The notes: generated from the sequence alone by a model not told the origin. Shown: positions 1-22,800, counted from the stretch's first letter. The stretch is 64,000 nt of DNA from Saccostrea echinata (GCF_033153115.1 NW_026889803.1:46686001-46750000); one strand, 5' to 3'. Made by a program: numbers and translations.

Positions 1-262
1 ATTTTAACAAAGTTTACAAAAGCGTGATGAAGGATGTATCATGTACACAAACAACTATTAAAATACACATACAGATATTCAAAAATGGAATTAAAATCAG
101 TGTTTGGGTGTAAATGACTATAAGTACAAAAACATTTATCTTAGGTAAAAAAAAAAATATGGTATTGTTTAGTGAAAGAACATAAATCAACGATGGATAT
201 CAAAATAATATGTTCTTGCATATAGAGTATCGATGTTTGTTCTGTAAAAGTGCCTGGAGTGA

Positions 263-3200: not shown

Positions 3201-6200
3201 ACTTGACTTAATCTGTGACAAACTTGACATCACCTGTCACATACTTGACATTCAAGACTGTCACAAATTTGACTTTACATGTGACAAACTTGACATCATC
3301 TGTCACATATTTGACATTATTTGTCACAAATTTGACTTTACCTGTGACAAATTTGACATTACCTGTGGCAAACTTGACATTGTGATAAATTTGACACAGG
3401 TAAATTTTACCTGTGACAAATTTGCCATTACCTGTGATAACATTATATTATTACATGTGACAAATTTGTCATTTCCTATGACAAACTTGACATTACCTGT
3501 CATAAATTTGACATTACCTGTTACAAATCTGTTGGCATAGATAGGTGGCAGAGAGGAATTTGTGAATTTGATCTTCTCCTCATATGTAGCTTTCAGATTT
3601 AGTTTGTTCATTGATAAATGATTTCCAATTTCATACACAGCAATCTTTCTCTCCTCTCCAGGTCGCTTTTGATTCAAAGTAAAATCTGGTAGAGGGGTCA
3701 ATGTAAATTTGGGATAAGTCTAAAGAAAAAAAAACATCTCATTTCAAACATGACAAAATGTACACAATGAAATGTTCATTAACCCTAAATGCATCTTGAT
3801 TGATAAAGTGTGTGAGGTTATTTATTCTGAACTGAAATTTACTGCAGCAGCAGCTGTATATATAAAAGTATCAATCTTACATCCTGTGATGTCACATCCA
3901 CATAGATCTTCCTAGTCTCAGCCATTGGACACTGGGACTGTAGAGTTCTGTCAAACATGCTCTGAAAACTCCAGTCTATGAGGAACAACAAAACAGGATT
4001 AATATTTAAGAATATTTAATACAAAACACACTGACAAGATCATCAGATTCATTTCTCACCTTGTTTGCCATTTTTATTTGTAGTGGGATCATATACAACG
4101 GTCAGTGTCTGCTTTAGCTCTGTAGCCTGTGTGTGACATTGGGAATCCTAACATACAGAATACATGTAAATTATTCAGATCGCAATAATACAATCTAGTT
4201 TTGGGATAAAATATGCATATATATTGTATTAACTTTGCTAGTATTAAAATATGATAGAAAATTTTTTCTTCTTTTTTACTTTTAATACTTCATATACCGT
4301 ACTGCTTTTTATTTTATGTTACAACACATCTCAATGTAATCTCAAAACTATTTAATTTAATGAAAAGGATCAGTACTTAACCCCTTACCTGACATACAAA
4401 TTCAGTACTCTTTCCCCTTACCTGACATACAGATTCAGTACTTAGCCCCCTAACCTAACATACAGATTTAGTACTTGATCCCCTTACAGACATACAATTT
4501 CAGTACTCAGTCCCCTTACCTTACAATACAGAGTCAGTACTTAGCCCCCTAACCTAACATACAGATTTAGTACTTAGCATCCTTACTTGATATACAGATT
4601 CAGTACTTAGCTCCCTTACCTGACATATAGATCTGACATGGACCCCAAGTGAGTGATAAAATCCATCATAGAGCTTTACAGAGTTAAGCAAACTGGCAAG
4701 ACCAATCTATAAATGTAAAACAAATATGACATTTGTAAGTATCAATTGAATTCTTCATTGATCATAATCACAATAATTTATGCAAACTAACAATTTGAAG
4801 ACTCTTAAGGCTACAATGTATACAGTATATATGTATATGCTGTCTTTATTTAAAAACAAAAGTATTACCTTGGATTCGCATGGCAGGAGTTTCTTCCATG
4901 GAGTCAGGTTTTCTGTACAGACCACCTCTCTTGGAAGTGTGGAATACCTGATGAACCGTGTATCTGCACTGTAAAACTCTGAGGCCAATCCTGTGGGTCG
5001 GAAACTCCATCGCGGCTGCACAGTTGACTTATTGTCCATGAAGTTCAGAGAAGCACAGAACAAGCCAGATAAAGCATTAACAAGATCAGCCCAGGTCTTA
5101 TCAACACTGTGAGAGAATAAAAATTTGTTTTAACCATTGAACTGGCTTTCTTTAATCTCACATTTTTTCTTCTCCAGTTTTTTCAAACCAAGTGGGATTT
5201 TGATTAAATGGAAGGAAATTAGCAGCAGTAGATAAAATGTTTAAGGAAAATATTTTCATCCAAAAAAACATATATATAATAATTCTTATTTGATTGCCAT
5301 AAAGCATACTTTATAACTTACCCAACATGAGGTTGGAACCATACCCACAACTCTGCCCCTGGGGGTGCATCCTCTGGAGGGTATCCCCATTTATCATGTT
5401 TCCATAGTCCTTGTGTTTGACTTAGATGCAATTCTTTCACTTTGTATGTTGTTAAAACATCACCAAGTGATTTGGGAAACAGGTGATAGTGTTGAACTAA
5501 AAGAAATATAAAAAAGAAACTTTTACTTAAGCCAACTGAAACATTACAAGCACTTCTATTCAATAAGGTGTTGTTTTTATCTGAAGTTTGAACCAGGAAT
5601 GATTTCAGGCACTCACAAAAAGGAAAGGCATTATAGGCTTGTGAACAACAAAATAATCGATCAACCTTGTGATCTGGAGGTACCGGGTTTGATTCTTGTT
5701 CTCAATGCATCAAACCTAAAACATAAACCCAGGAAATGACTTCCTTTGCAAGCACTGGCACTGGAAGTAAAAGTGATGGGTCTTTTAAATGATACCCTAA
5801 AAATCGAGGTCTTGTGTCATGGAAGGTGTTGGCATAATAAAGAACCCTCATTATTCAATGGTCCTGAGTGCCAAGTACCAAGGTAAATGTGTAAATTTGA
5901 AGCCCTTTACCGATATATAGTGTTGTCTCATATGAGTGAAAAATCCTCTCAAACAACAATTAATCAAAATATTACAGCGAGTGCAGCAAGCGGCACAAAG
6001 CGCTGCTCGTCACTGCAAGCTCTTAAAGCAACACCTGGGTGAAGAGAAAATTCATATTTTGCACACTGATCCAAAGGAATTTTTTTTCTGCAGTTACCTC
6101 GAGACCCACAATGCAACACTTGTGGATCTCACTGCTAACTTCGTTCTCACAGTAACAACAACTAAAAATTCACAAAAAATAAACTCACCTTGATTTAATG

Positions 6201-8054
6201 GATATTGCATACAAATAAAGTAATAGATTAAACATTCTTTGTTAAAATTTTGCACTTTCAAACTTCATTCATGAAAATGCAGTTAACATACCACGTCATG
6301 TGACGTCACAGTCTAGACGTTCCAAATGTCTTGTGCAGTTTAAAGAGGCAGATCTTAAAATAAAGTAAGCAACTGCGCTCGCCCCAACTGTTGCACCGAC
6401 AACATATTATCATAGTACAGTACAATTCGTTTATTATCATAGTTTATTTGTCAGGTCAAAACTTTATAATAAGCGACTTTTATAATAACCATAGTCGGCT
6501 GAAATTCATGTCGGACGGCTGACGATACGACGTTTGTGTAAATTATTGGATGTATTATACATCTTACTTTACATATAATTTCGATTTTTTAGGTTTATCT
6601 GAAATACAAGTTAACTGACATATCATTTCACAATATTTACTTACTGTTTCAACTTTTTATTATAAATAAATTCACTTAAATAAAGCTTTATACTCTTCAA
6701 ACTCAATCTTCTAGATCCCTTGGCATCCATCTTGTTTATTTTGATCTACTTTCATTTTTAATTTATGGTCAATTCAAATTACCAATGTTTCGTTTCGGTT
6801 TTTTTTTTTTTTTTTTTGTTTTTTGTTTTGGTCACATATTAAATAAATTAACACAGCAACAAAGCATGCATTCAAATTGTTTCTTTTATTCATCCAAAGT
6901 AGGCATAAAAAATTACCTATTTACACTTAATGTCGCCGTACAATTAAAATTGATTGATACAATGAGCATATGCATTCAAAGCCGCTTGGACAGACTGGTG
7001 AAAGAGTTAATTTCACTTAATTATTTCTTAATTAATCGGGTAGTTTTGTAATTGTAATTAACTATGAACATTGATCCAGACACCAAGCATAAGAAAGCTT
7101 GGGTTAATATTGACACTAAGTTTACTTTCAACACATTTGGTAAAAGGTATTTATTACGAGCGTACAATTCAGGATTAACATAAGAAGAAAATACGTTATG
7201 AAAAAAAGAGTTCGTGTTATCCTGTCATGTAATTCATGAAATAAACAGACTCCCTGTGAATCGCTCAGGTAAGTGCACTGAAGTGTGACTAATCTCCCCA
7301 GTCTTTCACTATTGGCAAATTTCAAAGTGAAAATCAAGCCATTGTGTATAGACAAGCGACAGTGCATGAGCCACAGGTGTAGATAGGTGTTATCTTTTGT
7401 TTTGTTGATTATCCCAAGAGTGAAAAGGTGTGAAAAAAATATTACGGACGGAAATTTTCTATTATAGTAAGCGAAGTGTATACTTTGACCTATGATAATA
7501 ACAGACGAAATTTATAATGAATTATTAAGAAATGGTTTTGTGTTTCAGATATCTATGATAAAAAAAGAAGTATGATATAAAACCGGTATGATAAAAAACG
7601 AATTGTACTGTACCAGATTGTGGATTTCAAAAGTAAACCAGAGTTAAAGAATCATGAAAGGTGGTGGTATGAATTTTGAAAAGAAATAAATACAGGTACA
7701 TGTATTTGAAATCACAAGAGGTAAGAAGTTAAAAGTGTAAGCTATGAAAAGGTTTTGATGGTATCCAATATGCGCTCACCCCAACGGTTGCGCCGTAAAA
7801 CATATCACTGACTGAAAATGCTAAAACCTGAAAGTGCCCAGGTGCTTACATGATTCCGGTTTATCGATCGACACATTCCAAATAGTTATGAACTGGAAAT
7901 GAAACATGACATGTCCACTAGAAAAGGGTTTTATAAAGAGCTCTTCTGAAAATTTGTCGTTGTGAATACCATTTGCGAAAGTTAAAACTGATAAGAGAAA
8001 GAAAAGTGCATTTTTTAATCCCGCGACCGGCTGCTTTGCCACAGTGACAACCAT
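263..8054 (-). CDS. PIGT: GPI transamidase component PIG-T (Gpi16 family), 10 exons, ~614 aa
   Basis: Exons with GT-AG ends and consistent phases: 8054-7850, 5496-5322, 5106-4869, 4706-4620, 4147-4060, 3975-3881, 3719-3518, 1686-1534, 1412-1166, 617-263. N-terminal signal peptide. Family motifs [91 protein letters not shown] (TM). Confidence 0.95.
887..1160. repeat. 34-bp minisatellite, 8 copies, abutting the PIGT exon 9 donor
   Basis: Unit gctgagtgaaatagatataaagtgtaaggtgaaa starting at 887, 920, 954, 988, 1022, 1056, 1090, 1124. Confidence 0.95.
1950..2424. mobile_element. MITE with CAGGG termini (hAT-like)
   Basis: TIRs cagggttcaacattaa / ttaatgttgagccctg; subterminal ttgtcc/ggacaa motifs; no clear TSD. 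Confidence 0.7.
2568..3155. mobile_element. Non-autonomous TTAA-target DNA transposon (Kolobok-like)
   Basis: ttaa|aggggcttggacacag ... ctgtaaccaggcccct|ttaa: imperfect TIRs with a TTAA duplication. Confidence 0.75.
3158..3528 (-). repeat. 21-bp minisatellite (~17 copies) containing the PIGT exon 7 end and donor
   Basis: Unit on the minus strand TTTGTCACAG|GTAATGTCAAA; the first copy is the real donor at 3517. Confidence 0.9.
4371..4632 (-). repeat. ~33-bp minisatellite (8 copies) containing the PIGT exon 4 end and donor
   Basis: cagtact anchor at about 4371, 4403, 4436, 4469, 4501, 4535, 4568, 4601; minus-strand unit ATCTGTATGTCAG|GTAAGGGG..CTAAGTACTGA. Confidence 0.9.
5665..5968 (+). mobile_element. 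tRNA-derived SINE, degenerate copy
   Basis: Colinear similarity to 50259-50588 (ccctaaaaatcgaggtc..gtgtca..gttggcataataaagaaccctca..aaatttgaagccctt) with a CAAT-like tail. Confidence 0.7.
6030..6410 (+). repeat. Dispersed repeat shared with NFS1 intron 1 (37567-37960)
   Basis: ctgggtgaagagaaaattca..gcacactgatccaaa..gagacccacaatgca..actcaccttgatttaatggatatt occurs at both loci. Confidence 0.8.
6418..7610. mobile_element. Tc1/mariner-type non-autonomous element
   Basis: ta|cagtacaattcgttt.ttatcata ... tatgataaaaaacgaattgtactg|ta; TA TSD; no transposase ORF. Confidence 0.85.
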
Positions 8055-8410
8055 GTTTAAAATAACCGGAACGCAGTTAATATAAATCAAGTTTTTATTT
8101 ACCAATATATTTTGACAAAATATAGATTTAAATTCATTTTCTATTGTGTGCGCCAGAGATATTTCTTATGAAAAAAGCTTTGATTTTATTTTATTTTGTA
8201 TTTATTTATTAATATAATCTTAATTCGGCTGTATTTTAGACCAGTCATTTTTAAAGAATATCGACATTTTCCATTAACCGGAAGCACATGACTTTGTTGT
8301 TAGTTTGGTTAGCTCTGCTGCACAAAGAGGAAAGTGATGCTACGCGATCAAAAGCATAATTTTAAGCTGGTCCTTTTATTTATGTGAATCGGGTTTTAAC
8401 ATACAGTAGG
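8055..8410. promoter_or_regulatory. Putative bidirectional promoter PIGT/JARID2
   Basis: Locally CpG-richer; ETS-like ACCGGAA at 8065 and ACCGGAAGC at 8277. The JARID2 ATG exon starts at an acceptor (10808), so an upstream non-coding exon is needed; candidate ~8290-8409 with donor tag|gtatat. Confidence 0.5.
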
Positions 8411-8859
8411 TATATATAAACTAAAGCAATGCCTTTTTTCATGAAGTAGAGTATGGTGCTTATAATATAATATAATATTTTTTTCATGATAGATCTATTT
8501 AAATTTCAACAACAACCAGGTCTGGCACAATCACTACATTTAGCTACGTGGCTTGAATTACCTACATAAATTTAATTAGCTACTCGAGGTAGCTTTGTTT
8601 ACCTACTTTATTATACTTTTTTCTTCAATGAGCATTTTTTTAAAGAAAAAATCGCACTTTGATGCGGTGATAGTTTTCAACTTCAAACGGATCCAGTACA
8701 ATCAGTACATTTAGCTACGTAGCTAAAATTACCTACCGTAGCTTTATTTAGATACCTCTGGTGGATTTATTTAGTTATTTCAATGCAAATTTTCACAATT
8801 TTGCTTTTTATTTAAAAAAGATTTTTAAAAAATCGCAAGTAGATGACTACTTATGTTTA

Positions 8860-9280
8860 GGCCATAAGAAAAAAATTCCTAAATTCTGATTTCTCATCCC
8901 TGCCCGCCTTGATTTTTTAAATTTCTGTTTGTCTTGATTCTGATCAGAATCGATATTCAACTACCCTTCAACTTTCGTTTTAAATCAAATGCCAGCATGA
9001 TTTTGACAGCTGACAAGATGGTAATTGCTGTAATATGTATTAATTAATTAAACAAGGATTATTGGTTGTGAAAGATTGGTGATGATCGTAAGAGATATGC
9101 ATACTCAAATGTACCTCTACTATGATTTTTATTTGAGCGTAATAGATAAATCTGCACCAATTGATCAGGTCAGCAAAATATCTGCACAATGGAGAAAAAA
9201 ATATTAAAATAAAATCTGCCTGCCGCCCCGATTTTTCAAAAAATTTGGATGAGAATCTAGGAATTTTTTTTATTATGGCC
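8860..9280. mobile_element. PIF/Harbinger-type MITE
   Basis: tta|ggccataagaaaaaaattccta ... taggaattttttttattatggcc|tta; 3-bp TTA TSD. Confidence 0.85.
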
Positions 9281-9895
9281 TTATACTAGGGATATTTAAA
9301 AAAGCAATCCACAAGTAGAGATGGTTTAAACATTGCTGCATTTGAACACTATTTAGCAAAAGATGTATTTTCATTGTTCGAGTAACTGTACACCACTTTG
9401 TTGGGGTGAAGCATTGATAAGTATGATTACTTCACATTGTGCTGAATAATTACTAATCAATTATTATGTTAAGCAGAACTGGTCTTCTTTGTTATTTCAT
9501 TTAAGAAGTAATAATAATAAATTTATAAAGCACTGAATATTAATAAAATTAATCAAAAGCGTTGTACAATAAAACACAAATAAACGTAATTTAAGAAGGA
9601 TGAATAAATTAATTTAACACATGTGTGTTAGAAATTATAATAAAATTCTAAAGTTACATACATATAATTACGTCATTAAAAAAGAAACTCTGAATAAAAG
9701 AGCGTCTTTTGAGATTTGTTTGTTAATATTTGTATGCCAAGTATTTAAAAAGCTATTCTGTAAAAATGTTTCTTTAAATGTCTTTTAAAAAGTAACTGTT
9801 TGGTCACATTGGATAAATTACTGTACAGTATTTCACTGTTGAAATTGTTCCAGTAATAAATGAAATTGTAATAAATGATGTAATTCTTAGATAAT

Positions 9896-9992
9896 GTGTA
9901 ACATGAAAGGGAGAAAAATTATGGTTGGACTGGGAATCAAACCCAGGATCCCTGCATCACTAGTCGTCTTGTGCTCTAAACATTGAGCTGTT
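9896..9992 (-). mobile_element. Short tRNA-derived repeat, same family as 44219-44320
   Basis: Reverse complement carries agctcaatgtttagagcac (A box) and gggtttgattcccagtcc (B box) followed by a ..tgttaca tail. Confidence 0.6.
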
Positions 9993-10351
9993 TCAGCGAT
10001 GAAAAATTTAATCTGCTTGTCATTTGGGAATTTTTACCTAAATTTTTTGGGGGAGAAGAGTCAATTTTCAATTGGGACAGGGTCCTTTTAATGAACCTGG
10101 ATGCAATGGATATATATTCCTTCACATAGTACCAAATAGTACAGATTTCTCTCTAAGAAACATTGTGTAGTGGACAGTACATAGGGAACTTATACTGCCT
10201 TGCTAGTGAGGTAACTTCTAGTGGTGCAGTAGAGTCTCCCTGTATTTCAGGCAAGTTAAGCAACGGCGAGCTTGCATAACCCTTGAATGGGTGAGCGCTT
10301 CACGTTACAATTGCAAATGCCATTTGAAAATGTAATGTGTCTTTCTATATA

Positions 10352-10526
10352 CAGTTGAACTTCAATATCTCGAAGTCTGATATCTTGAATACCATGGATA
10401 TGTCGAAGTGATCTGGAAGTCCCAACCATTTATTCTTAAAGTATTTTACCCCTGATATCTCGAATCCTTGGATATCTCGAAGTTTTTTCTCTGTCTAATC
10501 GGGTTCAAGATATCGAAGTTTGACTG
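10352..10526. mobile_element. Tc1/mariner-type MITE
   Basis: ta|cagttgaacttcaatatctcgaa ... gatatcgaagtttgactg|ta; internal gatatctcga repeats. Confidence 0.8.
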
Positions 10527-10825
10527 TATGTTTTCTCAAATAAATGAGAGCATGATGAGGGCTAGTAGAATAAAGACATTTAATGTTTGTCTCACTTAAA
10601 AATTATAACTCAAAAAGGGTTTTTAACATAAACATCAATTTAAAAGACAAAGTAAAGATTTAAGTTGTAAAATGAATATGGTTTGATTAAGCGATATTTA
10701 CTTTTTTTGTCACTTTCTTGGGACAAAATGTTCAACAGTTCAATTTATCTTCAAATCAAAGAAAGAACATGGTTATTTTATATATGTGTATTCATTTTTT
10801 ATGTTAGGAAGGAAAGATTTCAAAC

Positions 10826-13800
10826 ATGGTTGGGAGAAGAAGTTCCTCAGGAAGTAAGAAGCCTCCTGTTGTTTCAGAGCCAGCAGTGCCCCACAGATCT
10901 AAGAGACCCAAGAGAAACATCTCCCCAAAAAGCTATGTAGGTCCCCTGAATAGTTGTTTGTTTTCCCAAATAAATTGATAAATGAAATACAGGTAAACTT
11001 CGAAATCTTGACATTGGCAGAACTATTTGAAAATGTCAAGATATCTGGGGTGTCAAGATAACAGAGTTGAGATGCAGGGCCCAAGATTTATTGATATGGC
11101 AAATGAGTTTGTTACATGGTAAATGGATATGAATTCAACAGTTTCAGCAATTCCTCTCTTTCTTAATTGCATAAAAAGTAATAACTAAAATATCTAAATG
11201 ATAAAATGTGTTCTTTTCCATATTTTTAAAAGTTTTTAAATTTTACTAAATGTTCAATGTTCCAAATCATGTTATGTTTGCATTTTGTAAGAACAGGATA
11301 TGAAATGCGCTGTCTAAACATAGAACCCTACAAGAAAGAAAACAAATTAACATTTTTTGCTTTATTTGAACTAAACACAGAGAATGGTACATATGTTTGA
11401 ATCAAGACTATTTGATTGAATCACCGTTTGAATGTGTCATTATTTTTCATTGCCAAATTGTTATCCGTTGAATGCATTTTTACCACAAATATCAGAAATA
11501 AGTTGTTTAATTTCTTACATAATTTATTTGATTCATTGTGTTTCTCATTTATTGTAATTCAGTTGCCTTTTTCAGATCATACTTTTCATAGGTTTTGATA
11601 TAAATAAATAGGCACAAGCGTGTGCATTTATAATTAGTAATTTATTAGTAATATTACACTAACTGTTAATCATGACATAGTTGACATTACCGAGGTCAAC
11701 ATATGCATGTTTTTTGTCAAATCATTTAAATGTACATGTATATACATGTACATGTATATAGAAGATACTGCTGGGACTGTGGACATCGACATATCCCAAG
11801 TTGTTGACATATTCGATGTTAAGATACTAAAGTTTACCTGTATATATCACCCAATTATTTATTACAAGATTATATGTTTATACCTGTATATACACCATTG
11901 GTTTGGTTTGAACATAATTCATTGTCACAGCTAGGTAAACAAATGGATTTGGAGACAAGTTCTAGAAACTTACTATCTTCTCAAGATATTTATTGTTGGG
12001 GTTGGTAACTACATGTTTTGCTTGTGATTTTAGGATATCACAGCTGGCTTATCTTGGAAAGAGGAACGTGAACTAAAGAAAGCTTTGTATGCATCACTGC
12101 AAGAATCTAAAAAAGCTTCAACATCCAAACCAGATACAGCAACTGACTGGAAAACGCCTAGTGATGCAGGATTTCGACCAATCAAAACCAAGCCATCAAC
12201 AACAAGGATGACTCGGAGCTTCAGCTCACCAAACGTTCCGTCCACACCGGTCACTAGTGGTCAGTCTGTAAACAGCGTGGACGAGACCAGCCAGGACTCA
12301 ACAGTATCCTTACCAATCAACACGTCTACTCTTCAATCCAAAAAGTGAGAAATCTTAAGATCCAATTGTTTTATTTTGTTGCCATCTAGTACTGTTATTT
12401 CATTTGTTGTTCTCAATTTGAATACTCAACATGAATTGACATTTGATTTACATGTGCATGTATATATTAAATGTAAAGAAATCTTTGACCTTCAGTTAAC
12501 AAGTCAAGTAAAAGAAGTTATGTGTTTTCTAAGAAGTGTTCTCAGATGCAGTTACATTAATCAGATTGACACTGAAATTTATTTGATAGAAACATGATGC
12601 AGTTGTAGTAACACTAACATTAAAAGATCCATCAATGTTGAACTTGATGTACATTGAAATACATTTCAGGACCAAGGTACGTGCCCAGAGGAAGTTTGCC
12701 ATGAACCAACCCAACACTATTACTCCTTCTTCAGAAACCAGCTCTACTCCAGTGCCAAAAGCTACAACATCGTCCACTATCGTATTTCCAAAGAGGGCAA
12801 AAACCGAGGACTTCCTGACTTTCCTGTGTCTCAGAGGTACAGAGAATCTGTGATTTCAACCTTTCTTGTCCCTTCTCCATAATCAATATGTATTTGTTGG
12901 TTTATCATACTGTTAAAGTTGTGTTTCACTATTACTTCACAAATTTTGATGTTTACTATTCATTTTTGTTTTAATAATTGTTTAAATTTTTGCTTTATTT
13001 CTTTTCAAGATCTATGACCAAGTAGCACATTGTTTTTTGTATGTTTGTCTTTTAGTCTGTCTGTAGTTTTTACCTTGCTCACAGCCTTTTGAAGTACAGT
13101 AAACATTATGGGGACTTACATTTGATCAGATATTATCTTTTGATCACAGAGTGTGACATGACCTTGATACAGAGTCAAGGACACACAGGGATTGGAAGAA
13201 TAAAATTTGTTTTGGTAATTAATCTTGTAAAGCAGAAACATTCGATATTCATTCTTGACACAGAGAACACTTATGATGAAAAAAGTATAAAATAACTCTT
13301 ATTCAAGGTCATTTAATATAGATCAAGGTCAAAGGGATTGGAAATGTGTATATCATGGTCATAATTATGGACATGATGTAATAGAGAAACATTAAAGCCT
13401 TAAACTTGGCACATAGAGTATAACGAGACCCTGCTACAAGGTCATTTTGAAAAAGGTCATATTCTCAGAACCCTTTGCTTGACAGACATCAAACTTGGTA
13501 CATTTGTTCCCTCAAAGAGTAGATAATCCCTATTGATTTTGAGGTCACACTTTCATCACAGACATTCTAAATTTAAAGTTAATTCTTTTTAATATTGCCC
13601 CTTAAGGGCATACATGTTTCTAAAAACATTTCTTGATTTTTTATGCCCCGCCATGAATATGGCCGGGGCATATAGTGTTTGTCATGTCCGTCTTCCGTCC
13701 TTCTGTCCTTCCGTCCTTCTGTCCTTCCGTCCTTCCGTCTGTCCTTCCGTCACACTTTGCGTTTAGCTCTGTTCAAAGCTCAGTTTCAAAGAAACTATCC

Positions 13801-16800
13801 AAGATATTTTTATCAAACTTCATATGCTGATAGATATTGATGAGGGCTATGCAACTGCATCAACATTTTTTGACCTTGACCTTTCCTTTGACCTTGACCT
13901 CACTTTTCTTAAATTAGTGTTTAGCTCAGTTTTAAAGATACCATTCAAGATAGTGTAATCAAACTTCATATGTTGATACATACTGATGTAAGCTATTCAA
14001 TTGCATCAACATTTTTTTGACCTTGACCTTTATTTTGACCTTGACCTCACTTTTCTTAAATTAATGTTTAGCTCTGTTTTAATGAAACCATTCAAGATAT
14101 TTTTAACAAACTTCATATGCTGATACATACTGATGAGAGCTATTCAACTGCATCAATATTTTTTACCTTGACCTTTCCTTTGACCTTTACCTCACTTTTC
14201 TTAAATAAGTTTTTAGCTCAGTTTTAAAGATACCATTCAAGATAGTGTTATCAAACTTCATATGCTGATACATACTGATGAGAGCTATTCAACTGCATCA
14301 ACATTTTTTGACCTTGACCTTTCCTTTGACCTTGACCTCACTTTTCTTAAATTAGTGTCAAACTTCATATGCTGATACATACTGATGAGAGCTATTCAAC
14401 TGCATCAATATTTTTTGACCTTGACCTTTCCTTTGACCTTGACCTCACTTTTCTTAAATTAGTGTTTAGCTCAGTTTTAAAGAAACCATTCATAATATTT
14501 TCATCAAACTTCATATGCTAATACATACTGATGTAAGCTATTCAACTGCATCAACCTTTTTTGACCTTGACCTTTCCTTTGACCTTGACCTCACTTTTCT
14601 TAAATTAGTGTCAAACTTCATTTACTGATACATACTGATGAGAGCTATTCAACTGCATCAATATTTTTTGACCTTGACCTTTCCTTTGACCTTGACCTCA
14701 CTTTTCTTAAATTAGTGTTTAGCTCAGTTTTAAAGAAACCATTCATAATATTTTCATCAAACTTCATATGCTAATACATACTGATGTAACCTTTTTTAAC
14801 TACATTAACATTTTTTGATCTTGACCTTTCCTTTGATCTTGACCTCACTTTTCTTAAATTAGTTTCTGAATCAAACGTCATATGCTGATACATACTGATG
14901 TAAGCTATTCAACTGCAGCAATATTTTTTGACCTTGACCTTTCCTTTGACCTTGACCTCACTTTTCTCAATTTGTGTTAAAATGTTGTATTACTAATATA
15001 CCCTTGGCGGGGCATTCATGTCCTATGGACATATTTCTAGTTTTTCTTTACACAATCACATCTTGTTTATCCACTGTTTTATCCAATTAATATGTGGTGT
15101 ATAATTGTCTGTTGTAATGGCTTTCTTTACAGGAACATCTCTTTTGCCGCCACATTTGGACTTCTTTAACTACAGTCGTTATGACAACAGCAGTTTGAGT
15201 GGGCGTAATGGTAGAGACAGCTCCTCTTCCTCCTCCTCCACCAGTATCAGTAATGGAACAGAGGAGCCGATGTTTACACCGGTCAGTTAACACACACAAC
15301 ACTATATAACACTGAGTTATTCTGATATGGTCACTCATTGACTCCCTTTTGTAAATACATTTAATGAATTACTAGGTTTACATCTTAATAGAGTTATCAT
15401 TTGACAGAATTGACAGTTCAAAGCCTAACTTGATAGATAATTACATGTTTCTGATCGGATTGTATTATCGTAGATAACCAAATTTTTGTGAGACTTTTAT
15501 TCATGACAAAATTTTTTAGGATTTATTAGCTAAACAAAATTTTCATGAACGTTGGTTATTGTTTTATATAATCTTTAATAATAAAAATATGTAAATGTGT
15601 GCAAGAATGAAATTTTTGCCAGAAGTCAGTCTTGCACAATTACACAAAAATAAAGTTCTCACGAATAAAAAGTGATTTACAGTATGTAAATTTGTAATAA
15701 GATTAAATGCTATTTTCAGGTGAACAAATTTACAACACCATGTAAGAAGGCTGCCCGAGCCAGTGCGGGTACACCAGAGACATGTAGGGGTCTGGCTGGA
15801 GTCAAAAGACTAGACAAGACACCAAAAACCAAGTCACCTCTCGCTCGCCGTGGACGGCCTGCAAGGGCATTGAACATCACTCCTGTCAAAACTCCACCTA
15901 TTAAAGAGACCTCACCATCAAAGATCATCAACAACAGGCTCGGAAAGAGAAGATTGGGAAAGGATAGACTAGCTTCCAAGAGGAAGGCTGTGGCCACACT
16001 GACCCAAAAGGCTCCACCTGTCAAGTTCAAGAAAACAGAACCTGCTGAAGAACAAAATAAAGCTAACAAGGTAACAAAAGCACTTGGTGTTGCTTGTAGT
16101 GACATTGTATCCTGTAGTTTGCATGGTAGAATGGTGGACTGCACTTGTCTTGTGGAATGCCAGAATATATTTACACCAGCATATAGCACTAACATAGATG
16201 CTTCTCTCACCAACTTATGTATCTCAAACTTCCCTGACCTGTTTCCACTTATCCCTCCTGATTTCTACAATCTGTCTGAGAATGATCATCCGCCTGAATT
16301 GTACTCTGATGTACAAGAGGAGTGTGACCTAGTAAACAAAGATAATGCAGAGAATGTCCAAACATCAGATGGTAACATGCTTCAGACTGTCCAGTCAGAA
16401 GTTACAGAAGACATCAAAATGTTGACTGATGACATGTTGGATGCTGCTAAGCAGAATTCCCCTGTAGAGAAAGCCATTGCGACAGTGATTCAGACTCGTT
16501 TGTCCGATGATGATGTTCTGTTTGCTACCTCTGCCATCAAGATTTGTAAAATAGAGACAGAAGAACAGCAAACTAATTCTGGTACCAGTGTACAACCATC
16601 ACATCAGACAGAGGAAGGAGTAGAGGAGATGCTTACTTTGAAGGAGGAACAAGATCTTTCTGATGAGGAGTATCAGTCTATTTTGTCTTCTAATGGATTG
16701 ACCTATTTACAGGAAATACCAGAGCTTGTTCTGAAAGAGGAACCAGATTTCCTTGATTTAGATCATGGAGGTTTAAGTGTATTTTCTGAGCCATTTTTAC

Positions 16801-19800
16801 AACCAGGGAACACAAATGACTTAGCATCCAGTAATCCTGAATCAGCTTGCTCCAACTCAGTCCAACAAGAGGGACAGATTTGCACTTTATCACAAGATAC
16901 AACTTTATCAAACCAAGATCAGTTTTATCCTGAAGGTGATGCTGTGAACAAGAAAGAGTCTCCAAACACTGTTTTGAATACTTCTCAGACTTCTGCACAT
17001 TCATTTTGTGTGGAAGTGCGAAGAGTCCCTGACCATGAAGTCATATGTAGTGGTAAGAGTTGTGATGTGACTAAAAGTACATACCCAGGAAATGTTACAG
17101 ATGATTCCAAAATGGAAGATACAGGTTTGTCTTACGTTCAGAATGGGGATAATATCTCAGATATCAGGAAGATCACTTCGCCATCACTAGCAGGTGACCT
17201 GTTTTATGAAAATCAACAAAAGCTAAAGAGTTCTACAGAATTGATGTCTAACAGTGAAGCCTGTATTGTTGGTGCTAACAAACCTCAAGATTTTGAGTAT
17301 AGGCATACTGCAGCAGGTTTGGAATATACCAAAAACTCTGAAAATAAACCAGTGTATGAACAGGATAAGGATGTTCCTCTAGATCTAAGTTTACCAAAAG
17401 AGCAAAAGCATGGATCAGGAAAGAATACTGAAATTTGTAACAGGGATCTTTCTCTGATTCCTCTAAGCTCAGAAAGACTCATACATGTACCCTCTTTACT
17501 CAATCAGGGTATTACTTCTATAAAGATAGAAACAGACAAAATCATCATTCATCACAAATCTAAGAGAGAGCAAACTGAGATGTCATCAAATGAACAGATT
17601 GTTAAACACCTAGGAATTGGCCTCAAGGTACAGAACAGGTGTGATGAGAGAAGACAGGTCAATGTTGTTCTGCCTTATTGTTTAGTTAAGAGTGATGTTT
17701 CTTCAAAGGTTGTTGCCCCTCTAAACAACAGCATGAATGTTGATACTGAGGAACTGAAATCACCTGGACGTGTGGACTGTAGTGGAGATCAAATTGTACC
17801 ACTTGACCTACATACAGATTCCAATAAAGAAACATTTGCAGCAGAGGAAACAGATTCCAATCTACCAAAACTCCATGCAGTTAATTGTTTGTCCTTGAAG
17901 CGACCACTTATGATTAAGACAGATGCAATTAAGCTAGGAAGTAATGTCTTTCAGAGGCCTCCACATATGCCAGGGATTGTCTGGAAATCAAATAAAAAAC
18001 CTGTAATCGATTTCGCAAAATCCAAAGGTCAGCCTTTTAGTGATGTTCATTTCCCACAATCCATCAGTCGACCTCTGAGTGATACATCCTCTATGGAGAC
18101 ATTGTCCAATGATACCCAGAGCCACCCAGCACCACTTATCAACCATTCTTCCTATGAATTAGAAGAGAAACATTGCTCTGGCTCTCAGAATCACCATGCA
18201 CCACTTGCCACACATTCTACACGGCAGTTGTCGCATGATTCAGTAATGACACCCACCTCTATCTCAGACAGACACCTGTTGCCACTGACAGAACAGTCTG
18301 CACGGCAGATATCCCGGAATTCAAGAGAGAAGCTTCCCAGTATCACCCAGACAAACCTGATGCCTGATCTATTAAGGAACCTCAATGATTGTCTAAATAT
18401 GAGCAGGAAGGAAGCAGAAGTGTCTGAGACTGCTGCTGTGTCAGTTCTTACTGATGATTCTCTACAGAAACCAATGGTTACTTCATACCTCTCCCCACCT
18501 CTGCAGCCAACAATTCCTCAGGAATCTCTCTCATCAGAGAGTGAGACAGATAATGTGAGGTTTAAATGCAGAAAAGACTTTCTAAAGGAATTTCGGATCC
18601 ACCCTTCAGAAGTTGATGAGAATTGCAATACCAGAGTTTCACAGTCTCAAGCCTCTCCTTGGTTTGGACAGTATGTACAGCATGGACTTTTAGATAGCAG
18701 TAACAATAATGATGTTGAGACTAAGGATAAAGGAAAACATGGAGAAAGCAAGGATACAGAGCAACATCAATCAAACACTCCTTCATCACAGTTGATGGAT
18801 TCCATGGAAAACTGTCAGATTCTCAATGTTGATTCTCATATTCTTCAGGAAAACAAGAGAAAATCTTGTGATGGAAGTTATAGTAGTAAATCTATTGATG
18901 AAAATAGGAACATCCTAATCATGGACAGAAATATACATGACAGAAATAATTGTTCTGTTCCCAATATAAACTGCCAGCAAAGGAAGGGGTTGTACCCTTT
19001 ACCCCCTGCTATAATGTCCTCATGGTATTTCTAATGCATGTATACTCTGGTATATGCACCATGTGCCTGAACTTTTTTCTCTAGTCAATTCTAATAAGAC
19101 ATTTTAAAATTTAAAACGATGATACTTGTATTATGATAATTGATTTAAAGTAGCTGATCAAATAATGAGTTGAAAAATACTAACCCAGCATTGAGAACAC
19201 ATATTCTAAAAATTCAACATAGAGGTCAATTTACAAAGACCAAATATAATTTTGTGAATAACTTTCTTCTTTACATTAATATGGAAATGGGATTAATATT
19301 TTTTAAAAAGAATTTTGAAAGTTATTTTCATGCAAACAATTTTTGAAAGAATGGTAAATTTTGTAATATTTTTACAATCAAATAGTTTTTGATCTTAGTT
19401 GCAAGTTTTTTTGTAAAAGAGAGCACAGGTTGTTTATGCAATCCATCTTTCAGATAAATCACTGTGCTGATGGAAGAGTATAAACAAAAATATTGTAAAA
19501 CCTCTGATATTTTTGTAATGTAACTCTAAATCTAGATACAGAATCTTTTTTGTTTTAATACTTTCTTTTTCTTTTCTATACATACAAAAATTAACATCTA
19601 AGGTGATTTTGTATGAGGTAGAATTCTCAGCTTTTATCTCTTGAAGTATTATAAACAATTACATTAAATATGCCAGTGCTTTAAATATTAGTGCTTTTGT
19701 TACACACTAGCTGGTGCTTACTGAATTTACTCATTATGTTTGCATTTTCTAGAGATGTGTTAATTTTGGTATATCTGTCTCACAGAAATGTTTTGTTTTT

Positions 19801-22800
19801 GTTTGTATTATGTGCTATGGTATAGGTTCTTGTTTGTAATGTTATTTAGTTTGCTGTTTGGATTTATAAAATGTTAACAGGAGAGTTAAGGTTTCACTTC
19901 AAATAAAAGCATAAATTTAACATCTTCTTTATGGTTTGAATTAACAAATGGGTGAACCGATTTGAATATATATAACATAAATTGGAAAATGCATTAGTTC
20001 TTGTTAAACTTTTTTTTATATACAGCCACCTAAGTGTGCCTTGCAGGTGACTCGACAAACGTCCAAGAAACGACCAATCGGACCAAAGATCAATAAAGTA
20101 ATGACACTGCCTAATGACTATATTGCCATGCGGTTACCACGGAGACAAGCGAAGCAAAATGCACTCAAATTTTACATGGAGGATCTCGATGACGTTGAAG
20201 AGCGTTCAACATCTGATGATGAAGTCACATTCCCTCATAAAAGAAAATTTAAAGAATTCATGTCTGAAGCTCATGATTTCCCTTTTAAAAATTCTAGATT
20301 TAAAAAAATGAATAAAAATTCACTTAAATCTACAACACATGGTAGACAGCTGTTAAGGAATAGGTTAAAATTTAATAAAGATTTTAGTCATGGTGAAAGA
20401 AGAAGTACTAGATCATCTAGCAAATCGAGTGACTCCAACTCTACTGAAAGTAGTGATGTTTCCAAGAGAAATGTCAATCAGGATTTCAGTGGCTCAAATA
20501 TTAAAAGTAATAAAGATAAAAGTAATAATGATAAACATCAAACAAATGTCCCTGAGCGCCGTCCAGTTCGACAACAACGTGTTACGAGATTGTCAGAATC
20601 CAATACTCATCCCAACAGTAACTCGGAATCATCACCTGAACAACCAAAGACGAGAAAAAATAGTGGTAAGTATGATGGAAAACATGTCAGTGTATCTCAT
20701 TAAGCATTTTCTTAGAGAATATTCTGATTTATAAAATGTGTTCAAAATTGGATAAATATCACTTATTTTGTTTATCAGTTGTCTGCAGATTCAATTGACA
20801 TGCTTTCTATATACAAAATGGATTGTAAAAGCAATAAAAAGAGTTATTTTAATTCATACTTTTTATGGTTCAAAGCTTTTAGTATATTATTGAAACATTT
20901 CTTTCATTAATTATTTACTTGTATGATCATATATTTGTTAATATGAGTTAAGATCTAGCATGATGTTTTCATTGTCATTTCAGTTGGATCTAAGAATCTG
21001 AGATTACGGGATTCAGAGAGTCCTTTAAAATCCCTGCGGTCAGACACACCACAATCTCCCCGTGAGATCTCTACTAGCCTTACTGAAATACCAACCTTTT
21101 ACCCGACCGAGGAAGAGTTTCAGCGCCCCCTACAATACGTCCAGAGCATTGCTCCAAGAGCAGAACCATATGGGATGTGTAAAATCATACCCCCAGTCAG
21201 CTGGAAGGTACGCTAAACTAGGTGTGATATCCAAGCTGAAATAAAAACTTTTTCTACATCATATTTTTTATTGGAGAAATGAGATGTATTCATTTTTATA
21301 TCTATGTTTTACTTTTGGATGCAGATGGAAGGTAAAATCAGTGAAGATATAAGGTTTACCTCTCAGAAACAGTATACACACAAACTGTTTAAAAGGTAAC
21401 TTGTTCAATAGTTTCTCACAAATAGCAGAAAATTCTGTCAATTGTGTATATTGCAATAATGATTTGAACTTTAAATTCATTTCAAAGAGTCCTCATGATT
21501 AACATTATCTGAGATAAAAACGTAATATACACATTCATTTTTCAGGTTTGGCCCAAATGTGGAGAAGCTAGAGTGTATCAGAAAACATCTGGAAGCTTTA
21601 AATCCAGCAGAACAAATCCAGATACCAGAGGTACAGTTTCACAAGTTTCATTACTTGAAACAGACAATCAGTAAATGATGTTTGATGTTGAAAAAAAGAA
21701 TGTGATGACTGTTACCACTAGCTGTTTTTAAGTTGGCATGACTGTGTATTGGGACTGTATTTGATGTAGATAGGAGGGGTGGAGCTGGATGTTTGTGACC
21801 TGGACAGAACGATTCAGGACTTTGGTGGAATGAGGCATGAAGTGGAGAAAAAGAAGTGGGCCAGAGTGGCTGATGCTATGAATGTTCCAAAAATGGTAGA
21901 ATGTGCATTTTTAATTTTAAGTTCTTATTCACATTGATTTCTTATTCTCAATGAGTTTTCACTGATTGTCATTCCAGTTTGTAGAAGAATTAATTTCTTC
22001 ATGAAGATGAAATCTATGATAAATATCAAGAATAAACATTGGATTCTTTCTCATTTTTTTTTTTTTTTTTGAATTTGTATCCATGTTTAGATTAAGTTCA
22101 TTCTTTGTTGACAATGTTTGATGTTGCTATATTGTAGGCACAGGATCGAGGCACTAAACTGTATGATGCATACTGTAAGTTTCTGCTTTCTTACAATGAC
22201 TTGACTGCCGAGGAGAAATCTAAACTTGAAGGTCAGGTCAAGGCTGAGAGAATGAAGGTCAAACGAGAGGACCAGGAAGAAGACTGTATTGTCAAGGTAG
22301 AGAAACTTAAACATTGTAATGTTTTGGTTGAAAGTTACAGGTAACTAATATGTTTTGTAGTTACATGTATTACATTTACAATGTGCTCAATTATCAGGGA
22401 AAGAACATGTCCTTGGGTCGATTTATTCAGATGGCTAGGAACACTGCCTCACAACACCTGAAGGAGCAGACCCTAAAAACAGAGGAGTTGGAGGTATGCC
22501 CCCCAAAATAAGACAAAATAAACACAAAAAACAAACAAATGTCACTGAGATTTACAGTGTAATTATATGGCTATTGTATGAGATAAGTATATGTACATGT
22601 ATAATAATTGTAGAGTATTTAACAAAAGACAGAAAAATCCAGCTTTTTTTTATTAGTGATACAGTGTACTAGTTTTACTGTCTCCGTACTACCTCATTAT
22701 TTTACTGAATTACTGTCTTCACTAGTTTGCACCTATAATAAGCTTGGTTGTTATTTCATTTTAGAAACAGTTCTGGGAGATAGTCGGGAGCAGGACCAGA

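What the first reader, a model, noticed from the sequence alone, without database searches (positions are those of the whole stretch)
16071..19034. Hidden ~990-aa in-frame extension of JARID2 exon 5 predicts a JmjC-less, CtBP-motif PRC2 partner isoform
Seen: canonical JARID2 splices at AAG|gtaaca (16070) to 20026, yet the 'intron' stays open in the same frame for 2964 nt in AT-rich DNA, then stops. I found no phase-0 donor near its end, and there is an AATAAA at 19902. Reading through gives ~1350 aa. It retains the N-terminal segment (EERELKKALYASLQE), AQRKFA, EDFLTFLCLRG and the AT-hook, but lacks JmjN, ARID, JmjC and the zinc finger. The new tail carries PLDLS (17376-17390), PLDLH (17799-17813) and several psi-K-x-E/D sites (LKEE twice, IKIE, VKSD, IKTD). 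Established: JARID2 K116 (RKF) methylation activates PRC2 through EED; PxDLS binds CtBP; vertebrate PALI1/2 are alternative-splicing products of LCOR/LCORL that link PRC2 to CtBP. Inference: this lineage may build a PALI-like PRC2-CtBP bridge from the JARID2 locus through a donor versus intronic polyadenylation switch. I do not know of this being described.
Basis: partly seen in the sequence, partly recalled or inferred. Interest (0 to 1): 0.88.

Follow-up and report, generated by a model that had tools for sequence, protein, structure and literature searches.

The report
Oyster JARID2 isoform without JmjC
In oysters, exon 5 of the Polycomb cofactor gene JARID2 can run on past its splice site for 987 more codons and then end the mRNA, giving a conserved 1350-residue protein that keeps the PRC2-binding head, drops the JmjN, ARID and JmjC domains, and is fused to the normal isoform in public annotation.

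Summary
Window 15720-19034 (+) is one open frame of 1104 codons that starts at the exon-5 acceptor and runs through the AAG|gtaaca donor at 16070. By base composition, the chance of 987 open codons is about 1e-28.

It is transcribed. In four public runs from two studies, assembled contigs join exon 4 to 15720 with the intron removed. They then run unbroken through 16070 and the stop at 19032-19034, and end at 19896-19918, around the AATAAA at 19902. No contig splices out of the tail.

It is conserved. Other oysters (Saccostrea cucullata, Crassostrea virginica, a C. gigas-group cluster of 135 assembled sequences, and one unnamed species) keep the frame open at 30-72% identity. All whose own end is on record stop at ...LFPLPPxIMSSWY[YF].

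Canonical 16070-to-20026 splicing is supported by RefSeq isoforms of Ostrea edulis and C. gigas. RefSeq models of both Saccostrea species and C. virginica fuse the tail to exon 6. In this genome that needs a TA..AG intron starting at the stop codon, so it is probably an annotation artefact.

The tail is predicted disordered, with short conserved islands. PLDLS is kept in four of five lineages and lost in C. virginica. PLDLH is not conserved. CtBP binding and a PALI-like role remain untested. The scan had not found this before.

The parts
10826..10936 (+). JARID2 exon 1, coding part (residues 1-37 of P0001)
   Evidence: tblastn of P0001 on the window
12034..12344 (+). Exon 2, with the UIM-like EERELKKALYASLQE
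   Evidence: Sequence read; aligns to human JARID2 N-terminus
12670..12836 (+). Exon 3, with AQRKFA (human K116 equivalent) and EDFLTFLCLRG (SUZ12-binding segment)
15133..15281 (+). Exon 4. Its last 30 bases are the letters that precede 15719 in the transcript contigs.
   Evidence: Loose ends, located at 15251-15280; sequence
15720..16070 (+). Exon 5, canonical part (AT-hook RGRPAR). It ends at the weak donor AAG|GTAACA.
   Evidence: O. edulis and C. gigas canonical isoforms join ...K|P(S/P)K here.
16071..19031 (+). Read-through tail: 987 codons in frame with exon 5, predicted disordered, specific to oysters
   Evidence: unbroken contigs; orthologues; pLDDT 29.5; single copy in the genome
17376..17390 (+). 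PLDLS, a CtBP-type PxDLS motif inside a conserved island (D.PLDLSLPKE..H)
   Evidence: present in S. echinata, S. cucullata and P0002; PLDLR in P0003; absent in C. virginica
17508..17555 (+). GITSIKIETDKIIIHH, the best conserved block: a predicted beta-hairpin holding the only conserved psi-K-x-E site, followed by a hydrophobic III run
   Evidence: Invariant columns; strands 481-487 and 490-496 of the model
17922..17948 (+). DAIKLGSNV, a conserved block of unknown role
   Evidence: Invariant D735-V743
18360..18383 (+). MPDLLRNL, a conserved block of unknown role
   Evidence: Invariant M881-L888
18990..19031 (+). Conserved C-terminal motif LYPLPPAIMSSWYF
   Evidence: The ORF-derived orthologues P0002, P0003, P0004 and P0022-P0024 end ...L[FL]P[LP]PPxIMSSWYY
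19032..19034 (+). Stop codon TAA of the tail isoform. The RefSeq model jumps from 19031 to 20026 across it.
19035..19918 (+). 3' untranslated region of the tail isoform (GC 0.27)
   Evidence: Contigs run on to 19896, 19910 and 19918; depth is 0 in 19975-20161 in all four runs
19902..19907 (+). AATAAA, the likely polyadenylation signal
   Evidence: contig ends cluster around it
20026..20665 (+). Canonical exon 6 (PPKCALQVTRQ...), used by the full-length isoform
   Evidence: contigs end at the 20665 donor with further unaligned letters

Best explanation
The window holds the JARID2 (Jumonji) gene of the oyster Saccostrea echinata. Exon 5 has two fates. If its weak donor (AAG|GTAACA, 16070) is used, it joins exon 6 at 20026 and gives the full-length protein with JmjN, ARID and JmjC. 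If the donor is not used, the exon continues as a composite terminal exon: 987 more codons, a stop at 19032, and a 3' UTR of about 885 nt that ends just after the AATAAA at 19902. The product is a 1350-residue protein. It keeps the N-terminal PRC2-facing modules: the UIM-like segment, the RKF site equivalent to human K116, the EDFLTFLCLRG segment that contacts SUZ12, and the AT-hook. The chromatin and DNA domains are replaced by a long disordered tail. The tail carries a few conserved short motifs: PLDLS, IK[IV]E plus an III hairpin, DAIKLGSNV, MPDLLRNL and the C-terminal LFPLPPxIMSSWY[YF]. Shown here: the frame, the transcript structure, the conservation and the conserved end. Inferred, at about 0.4: the isoform binds PRC2 through its head as the full-length protein does, and uses the tail motifs to bring in other partners or to compete with full-length JARID2. 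CtBP through PLDLS is one candidate partner, at about 0.25.
For: Frame and chance. Transcripts: contigs of four runs from two studies (X2 5018 nt, X5 4406 nt, X4 3483+708 nt, X1 1130+263+3321 nt) start their match exactly at 15719. The letters before that point equal the end of exon 4, so intron 4 has been removed. The contigs cross 16070 and the stop without a joint and end at 19896-19918. Intron 4 and 19975-20161 have no real coverage, so the runs behave as RNA. The tail is single copy in the genome, which rules out a retrocopy. The 818 and 874 letters upstream of 15719 fit 738 nt of exons 1-4 plus a short 5' UTR. Conservation: an exhaustive HMMER search of 1.84 billion representatives gave only oyster hits. 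P0002 (939 aa; 135 Logan members on contigs of about 5 kb), P0003 and P0004/P0022-24 (C. virginica) all read through the donor-equivalent site (K|VT or K|VN) where they cover it, and all end at ...IMSSWYY. Canonical junction: O. edulis ...NKTEK|PSKCALPLSQ and C. gigas isoforms. Head: residues 26-238 align to human JARID2 4-202, E 1.5e-17, including a 449-residue JARID2 fragment chain deposited in 8vnv/8vnz. JmjN 1600-1633, ARID 1674-1751 and JmjC 1888-2003 all lie downstream of the tail. The stop sits in the last exon, so nonsense-mediated decay is not expected (inference).
Against: The data are contigs, not reads. They cannot show a poly(A) tail, the strand or isoform ratios, and only 30 letters of the upstream part were visible. 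No contig listed shows the 16070-to-20026 joint in this species, so the switch rests on orthologues. Three RefSeq models (S. echinata, S. cucullata, C. virginica) splice the tail onward. Constraint on most of the tail is weak: transcript variants are 4 synonymous to 14 non-synonymous against a site ratio of 3.65. Identity between the two Saccostrea species is 72% in the tail against 90-94% elsewhere. Columns conserved in distant oysters are not significantly better kept between the two Saccostrea (0.80 vs 0.73, p 0.2). No protein-level evidence exists.
Confidence: 0.8

Rival explanations
1. Giant cassette exon. The 3.3-kb exon is internal and is spliced on to exon 6, giving the protein of about 2060 aa that RefSeq predicts (XP_061196680.1, and likewise in S. 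cucullata and C. virginica).
For: Three independent RefSeq models contain the tail followed by exon 6. Clam isoforms (Mercenaria X2, Ruditapes X2) carry in-frame insertions of about 350 aa at the same place, and these may be true cassettes.
Against: In this genome the model joins 19031 to 20026, so the implied intron starts TAATGC at the stop codon itself, TA..AG rather than GT..AG. The junction differs in each species (WYF|PPK, IMSS|MM|PPK, WYY|YPSALSV), as ad hoc bridging would give. No joint leaves the tail in any of four runs, and contigs continue about 880 nt past the stop. The peptide IMSSWY[YF] abuts the stop in every oyster ORF. The only fair phase-0 donor is at 18555 and has no support.
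Confidence: 0.07
2. Non-productive intron retention or read-through. The RNA exists but is noise or nuclear-detained, and the open frame has no protein function.
For: Polymorphism looks nearly neutral (pN/pS about 1 on 18 variants). The tail diverges fast. There is no fold and no known domain.
Against: A 987-codon frame has a chance of about 1e-28. It is kept open, with only in-frame indels, the same start and the same stop, in at least five oyster lineages at down to 30% identity. It also holds invariant islands and an invariant C-terminus. A transcript of the same size recurs in 135 assembled sequences of another species.
Confidence: 0.04
3. A real isoform that acts as an antagonist rather than a bridge. 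It occupies PRC2 and H2AK119ub through the head but lacks ARID, JmjC and the zinc finger. It would then compete with full-length JARID2, as the mirror image of the known delta-N JARID2, and the PLDLS would be incidental.
For: The head is complete and the chromatin domains are absent. PLDLS is lost in C. virginica, while the other blocks and the C-terminus stay. About 0.2 PxDLS-type matches are expected by chance in 987 residues of this composition (my estimate).
Against: A mere decoy would not need 987 codons kept open, nor five conserved islands and a conserved C-terminus. The PLDLS island is conserved amid variable flanks in four lineages.
Confidence: 0.3

Closest known systems
PALI1/PALI2 (PRC2-associated LCOR/LCORL isoforms, vertebrates)
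   Same: Both are alternative isoforms made by including one exceptionally large exon. Both give a mostly unstructured protein that would combine a PRC2-facing part with PxDL-type motifs (PMC8864842; PMC8319299 for K1241 mimicking JARID2 K116).
   Different: There is no sequence similarity: an exhaustive search found only oysters. In PALI1 the giant exon supplies the PRC2-binding region and the shared LCOR head supplies the CtBP motifs. Here the shared head is the PRC2-binding part and the giant exon supplies the PLDLS. PALI belongs to PRC2.1 and JARID2 to PRC2.2. Binding is untested here.
Delta-C JARID2 from intron-15 retention and delta-N JARID2 in the dragon lizard; delta-N JARID2 in human keratinocytes
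   Same: These are natural truncated JARID2 forms made by intron retention, an alternative start or cleavage. They are proposed to change PRC2 targeting (PMC9020659, PMC6356158).
   Different: The reptile delta-C form loses only the C-terminal zinc finger and gains no conserved sequence. The delta-N forms lose the PRC2-binding head, the opposite of this isoform. The oyster form ends after the AT-hook exon and adds a conserved 987-residue tail with its own stop and 3' UTR.
Composite terminal exons from intronic polyadenylation
   Same: A weak 5' splice site competes with a downstream poly(A) signal in the intron. The exon extension is translated in frame to a new C-terminus (general knowledge, not tested here).
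   Different: The extension is unusually long (2961 nt coding), and its frame is conserved across a whole family.
Recombinant N-terminal JARID2 fragments used in PRC2 structures
   Same: The oyster isoform keeps the region equivalent to the human fragments that bind and stimulate PRC2. The match includes the 449-residue chain 8vnv_B.
   Different: Those fragments are laboratory constructs. This is a natural isoform with an added tail.

Membership tests
JARID2 / Jumonji gene | JmjN, ARID and JmjC domains in that order | tested here: met
   Pfam on P0001: JmjN 1600-1633, ARID 1674-1751, JmjC 1888-2003. Best PDB matches are human JARID2, E 1e-132. All three domains are encoded downstream of 20026.
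JARID2 / Jumonji gene | N-terminal PRC2-interacting region: UIM, the R-K-F methylation site, the SUZ12-binding segment | tested here: met
   Residues 26-238 align to human JARID2 4-202 (E 1.5e-17), with AQRKFA and KTEDFLTFLCLRG identical.
JARID2 / Jumonji gene | C-terminal C5HC2 zinc finger (PF02928) | tested here: inconclusive
   Not found in P0001, which ends early at 26066. It is also missing from the precomputed Pfam lists of the other bivalve models. Not pursued.
Composite terminal exon / intronic polyadenylation isoform | Transcripts continue through the 5' splice site without splicing | tested here: met
   Contigs of four runs cross 16070 unbroken after a spliced exon 4-5 junction.
Composite terminal exon / intronic polyadenylation isoform | Cleavage and polyadenylation inside the intron | tested here: inconclusive
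   Contig ends at 19896, 19910 and 19918 bracket AATAAA 19902-19907, and depth is zero beyond. Contigs cannot show poly(A) tails. In X4 the unbroken coverage ends at 19041, with only one further low-depth piece at 19353-19579.
Composite terminal exon / intronic polyadenylation isoform | The same 5' splice site is also used to make the full-length mRNA | tested here: inconclusive
   Supported by O. edulis and C. gigas RefSeq isoforms with the K|P(S/P)K junction, and by expressed downstream exons. The 16070-to-20026 joint itself was not among the listed contigs.
PALI1/PALI2 | Sequence homology to the LCOR/LCORL large exon (PRC2-interacting region) | tested here: not met
   phmmer of the tail against 1.84 billion representatives gave four clusters, all oyster. 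No Pfam hit. The Atlas search was blank. This is an analogy at most.
CtBP-binding PxDLS short linear motif | Match to the motif pattern P-[LVIPME]-[DENS]-[LM]-[VASTRG] (ELM pattern, quoted from memory) in an accessible, disordered region | tested here: met
   PLDLS at residue 799 of P0001; the region has pLDDT below 50. PLDLH does not fit the pattern.
CtBP-binding PxDLS short linear motif | Conservation of the motif at the same position in orthologues | tested here: inconclusive
   PLDLS in S. echinata, S. cucullata and P0002; PLDLR in P0003; replaced by VIGSLGIP in C. virginica, which has a PLSLT elsewhere.
CtBP-binding PxDLS short linear motif | Physical binding to CtBP | not testable with these tools
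   No oyster CtBP sequence could be obtained without joining exons, so no complex prediction was sent.

The most novel reading that the evidence does not exclude
Molluscs have an old, so far unrecognised second product of the JARID2 locus. It is a PRC2-binding head fused to a fast-evolving disordered tail that ends in a conserved LFPPPPx[IV]M... C-terminus, seen in oysters and at the end of the 1660-residue insertion in the abalone model. This product would recruit CtBP or another corepressor to PRC2.2. That would be a lophotrochozoan counterpart of vertebrate PALI1, reached by convergent evolution, with splicing versus intronic polyadenylation as the switch.
Probability: 0.15. Interest if true: 0.75.

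Novelty: new variant of a known kind. Interest (0 to 1): 0.55.

Why it matters
JARID2 is the accessory subunit that defines PRC2.2, and its ARID, JmjC and zinc-finger half has no settled function. A natural, conserved isoform that keeps only the PRC2-facing head and swaps the rest for a motif-bearing tail would be a ready-made separation-of-function allele in a non-model phylum. It gives a direct way to ask what the two halves do. It would also show that new PRC2 partners can be built by adding a giant exon outside vertebrates.

There is a practical point too. RefSeq models of three oyster species, and probably one abalone, appear to merge two isoforms into one protein of 2060-2840 aa called 'uncharacterized protein'. 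Expression and orthology analyses of oyster JARID2 will then mix two different products. Oysters are used to study environmental and developmental epigenetics, so the isoform ratio may be a useful read-out.

Tried and rejected
**Searches that came back blank**
- The word-index protein search with the tail found nothing. With the conserved core it found only P0003. These blanks are uninformative, because the exhaustive search did find relatives.
- Pfam on the tail gave only a sub-threshold Peptidase_U32 hit, taken as chance.
- The ESM Atlas search on the core gave no usable hit.
- The JGI metagenome scan for the P0003 contig found nothing.
I could therefore not inspect the orthologous contigs or the C. 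virginica locus.

**Structure**
- AlphaFold2 on the tail with a 5-sequence alignment gave mean pLDDT 29.5. No fold search was run, because it would be meaningless at that confidence.

**Ideas tested and dropped**
- Internal duplication: the second PLDLS/PLDLH pair at 36066 and 36491 has the same spacing but lies in stop-ridden frames, with no DNA or protein similarity. It is chance.
- Retrocopy or paralogue: rejected, because the tail is single copy in the 923-Mb assembly.
- A separate gene with its own promoter: rejected for S. echinata, because the contigs are spliced to exon 4.
- Homology of the tail to the insertions in Solemya, Mercenaria and Ruditapes models: not detected with a full-length or block profile.
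- SUMO sites LKEE, VKSD and IKTD: not conserved.

- No complex prediction was sent, because no CtBP chain was available without joining exons.
- I did not build or search the joined 1350-aa isoform. It equals residues 1-1350 of the public model P0001, and exons were handled by reference.


Full report
**What is in the sequence**

The window is G000:C54:46686001-46750000 of Saccostrea echinata. It holds the JARID2/Jumonji gene on the + strand.

By tblastn of the RefSeq model P0001, and by reading the splice sites, the first exons are:
- exon 1, coding part: 10826-10936
- exon 2: 12034-12344
- exon 3: 12670-12836
- exon 4: 15133-15281
- exon 5: from 15720
- exon 6: 20026-20665

From 15720 the frame stays open for 1104 codons, to the TAA at 19032-19034.

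By base composition, the chance of 987 codons staying open is about 10^-28.6. The next longest open stretch in the window has 505 codons. GC is 0.38-0.46 in the frame and 0.27 directly after it.

**Is it transcribed, and how?**

Five public runs hold about 90% of the sampled words of 15720-19100. I laid the contigs of four of them, from two studies, on 15300-20900.

In each run a contig begins its match exactly at 15719. The letters before that point are unaligned to the intron. Their last 30 letters are the end of exon 4 at 15251-15280, so intron 4 has been removed.

Intron 4 itself is covered only by fragments of 40-55 nt at 90-95% identity that belong to many unrelated contigs, which marks a repeat. 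The bin 19975-20161 has zero depth in all runs. The runs therefore behave as RNA, although the index only guesses so.

From 15719 the contigs run without any joint through 16070, through the whole frame and through the stop:
- X2: one contig of 5018 nt covering 15719-19918
- X5: one contig of 4406 nt covering 15719-19910
- X1: three abutting contigs reaching 19896
- X4: contigs reaching 19041, plus a fragment at 19353-19579

The 818 letters (X2) and 874 letters (X4) upstream of 15719 fit the 738 nt of exons 1-4 plus a short 5' UTR. This is an inference, because only 30 of those letters are shown.

The three ends at 19896-19918 bracket the AATAAA at 19902-19907. The hexamer alone means little in this AT-rich DNA, which has 353 AWTAAA matches in the window. 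Contigs also cannot show a poly(A) tail. The 3' end is therefore consistent with the model, not proven.

The tail is single copy in the 923-Mb assembly, so the spliced form is not a retrocopy.

Exon 6 and later exons are also represented. Contigs end at the 20665 donor and then go on into unaligned letters. No listed contig covers 20026-20190 or shows the 16070-to-20026 joint.

**Is the frame conserved?**

An exhaustive HMMER search of the 987-residue tail against 1.84 billion representative proteins found four clusters, all from oysters.
- P0001 is the RefSeq model of this very gene: XP_061196680.1, 'uncharacterized protein LOC133204955', 2059 aa.
- P0002 (939 aa) stands for 135 near-identical sequences from Logan assemblies on contigs of about 5.0-7.7 kb. 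Its exon-5 part is almost identical to the C. gigas protein.
- P0004 (1028 aa), with P0022-24, are ORFs from C. virginica DNA in ENA assemblies. They begin in the intron just upstream of the acceptor (...CLLQ|VNKF).
- P0003 (974 aa) is a 'hypothetical protein' from a JGI record of unknown species.
- P0025 is the S. cucullata RefSeq model.

Where they cover the site, these sequences read through the donor equivalent (K|VT... or K|VN...). All that are plain ORFs end at the same place, with ...K(K/R)L(F/L)P(L/P)PPxIMSSWYY against LYPLPPAIMSSWYF here.

Identity to S. echinata, by part of the protein:

| Compared with | Exons 1-4 | Exon 5 | Tail | Downstream part |
|---|---|---|---|---|
| S. cucullata | 92% | 90% | 72% | 94% |
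| C. virginica | 70% | 76% | about 31% | 76% |

The tail therefore evolves much faster than the rest. Even so, the frame, its start, its stop and five short islands are kept:
- D.PLDLSLPKE..H
- G.TTIK(I/V)E.DK(I/V)(I/V)I, followed by L.V.N.C.....V.V..P
- DAI(K/Q)LGSNV...WK
- MPDLL(R/Q)NL
- the C-terminus

Within the species the transcript variants give 4 synonymous against 14 non-synonymous changes in the tail. The site ratio is 3.65, so pN/pS is about 1. The columns conserved among distant oysters are not significantly better kept between the two Saccostrea species.

This pattern, an open frame under selection with most residues free to vary, is what a long disordered region with a few linear motifs gives. 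AlphaFold2 agrees as far as a 5-sequence alignment allows: mean pLDDT is 29.5, and the only secondary structure is a hairpin on TTIKIE/DKIIIHH plus a strand at LKVQ.

**The canonical junction and the public annotation**

RefSeq 'protein Jumonji-like' isoforms of Ostrea edulis (P0026, 1193 aa) and C. gigas (P0028, 1195 aa), and one Logan ORF (P0027), lack the tail. They join ...NKTEK|PSKCALPLSQ..., the exact equivalent of ...NKANK|PPKCALQVTRQ, which is 16070 joined to 20026. The canonical splice is thus supported by orthologues.

The RefSeq models of S. echinata, S. cucullata and C. virginica contain the tail and then continue into exon 6. In this genome the model reads ...SSWYF|PPKCAL. That joins 19031 to 20026 and implies an intron that begins TAATGC at the stop codon itself, TA..AG rather than GT..AG.

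The junction also differs between species: IMSS|MM|PPK in S. cucullata and WYY|YPSALSV in C. virginica. No contig shows such a joint, the contigs continue about 880 nt past the stop, and the conserved peptide abuts the stop. I therefore read these models as two isoforms merged by the annotation pipeline. How the pipeline came to do so I cannot tell.

A crude donor score puts AAG|GTAACA (2.2) well below the exon-6 donor GTG|GTAAGT (6.0). The K|V(T/N) residues of all the oysters imply a donor without G at +5. This fits a weak site in competition with read-through, but it is an inference.

**How it most likely works**

Residues 26-238 of the protein align to human JARID2 4-202 (E 1.5e-17). AQRKFA (the K116 site) and KTEDFLTFLCLRG are conserved. 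The match includes the 449-residue N-terminal fragment deposited in 8vnv/8vnz. JmjN, ARID and JmjC lie at 1600-2003 of the fused model, downstream of the tail.

The tail isoform is thus the PRC2-facing head of JARID2 plus the AT-hook and a 987-residue disordered tail. JARID2 K116 methylation binding EED, and the N-terminal region binding SUZ12 and H2AK119ub, are established for flies and mammals (PMC8864842). That they hold in oysters is inferred from sequence.

The tail has no relatives outside oysters and no known domain.

It is PLDLR in P0003 and is replaced by VIGSLGIP in C. virginica. PLDLH is seen only in Saccostrea and does not fit the pattern.

I estimate about 0.2 chance matches to the pattern in a tail of this composition. 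PLDLS and PLDLH also turn up in non-coding frames elsewhere in the window. Only the conservation speaks for the motif.

Of the sumoylation-type sites, only IK(I/V)E is conserved. It is followed by D-K-(I/V)(I/V)I, which could equally be a beta strand or a SUMO-interaction motif (speculation).

My estimates are:
- 0.8 that this is a real, translated alternative-terminal-exon isoform
- about 0.4 that it acts with PRC2 through the head and brings or blocks partners through the tail
- about 0.25 that CtBP is one of those partners

A decoy role, the mirror image of delta-N JARID2, is a serious rival.

**Comparison with what is known**

PALI1 is a vertebrate-only isoform of LCOR made by a very large exon, and it mimics JARID2 K116 with its own K1241 (PMC8864842, PMC8319299). 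The resemblance here is in the way the protein is made, not in sequence, and the parts are arranged the other way round.

Known truncated JARID2 forms are different. The dragon-lizard delta-C form loses only the zinc finger. The delta-N forms of lizard and human lose the PRC2-binding head (PMC9020659, PMC6356158).

**Beyond oysters**

Models of other molluscs also carry large insertions right after the N-terminal part:

| Species (model) | Residues inserted |
|---|---|
| Haliotis rufescens (P0040) | about 1660 |
| Solemya velum (P0035) | about 1315 |
| Mercenaria (P0059) | about 350 |
| Ruditapes (P0078) | about 358 |

Profiles of the oyster tail do not match them, with one exception. The abalone insertion ends ...GRLFPPPPCVMACGIC and is then fused to the next exon. 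The oyster tails end ...KRLFPPPPPIMSSWYY followed by a stop.

The number of residues after PPPP is the same in both. The block profile gives E about 1e-4 in that small search. The pattern L[FLYI]P[LP]PP occurs nowhere else among the 143 proteins collected. This hints that the tail and its end are older than oysters, and that the abalone model is fused in the same way. It rests on a short motif only.

**Limits**

- All transcript evidence comes from assembled contigs of runs whose type is guessed.
- The reads tool and the run search were limited to one call each.
- The joined isoform was not built or searched as such.

Noticed in passing
P0040 (Haliotis rufescens, 2839 aa) residues 290-1949; P0035 (Solemya velum) 355-1669; P0059 (Mercenaria) 338-685; P0078 (Ruditapes) 376-733: JARID2 models of other molluscs carry large insertions at the same place, after the N-terminal PRC2-binding part. 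Only the abalone insertion shares something with the oyster tail: it ends ...RLFPPPPCVMACGIC and is fused to the next exon exactly where the oyster tails have their stop.
   Followed up: partly
window 41499-43013 (+): An intron-less ORF of 504 aa starting with ATG encodes a PP2C-type protein phosphatase (Pfam PF00481, E 4e-38). It lies downstream of the last JARID2 exon mapped (26066). I did not examine whether it is a separate gene or a retrogene.
   Followed up: no
window 15634-15691 (intron 4): About 50 nt match pieces of many unrelated transcript contigs at 90-95% identity on both strands in all four runs. This is probably a short dispersed repeat that is often transcribed within other genes.
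   Followed up: no
window 36066-36080 and 36491-36505 (+): A second PLDLS and PLDLH, with nearly the same spacing as in the tail (425 vs 423 nt), lie in stop-ridden non-coding frames with no similarity to the tail. This is a coincidence, and a reminder that such pentapeptides arise by chance.
   Followed up: yes
window 18555 (+): AAT|GTGAGG is the only fair phase-0 donor late in the tail. If used with the 20026 acceptor, it would give an in-frame cassette lacking the last 160 tail codons. No contig supports it.
   Followed up: partly
P0002 and its 135-member cluster (C. gigas group, Logan contigs of about 5 kb): The called ORF begins at a Met that is a normal internal residue of Crassostrea exon 5 (...GVKRMDKSPKTK), not at the JARID2 start. 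The gene caller may have chosen an internal start, or these transcripts may lack exons 1-4 in frame.
   Followed up: no
window 26066 onward; P0001 C-terminus: The RefSeq model ends at ...GIPAFEQIL, with no C5HC2 zinc finger, whereas the C. virginica model goes on for about 130 more residues. The 3' end of the S. echinata model may be incomplete.
   Followed up: no
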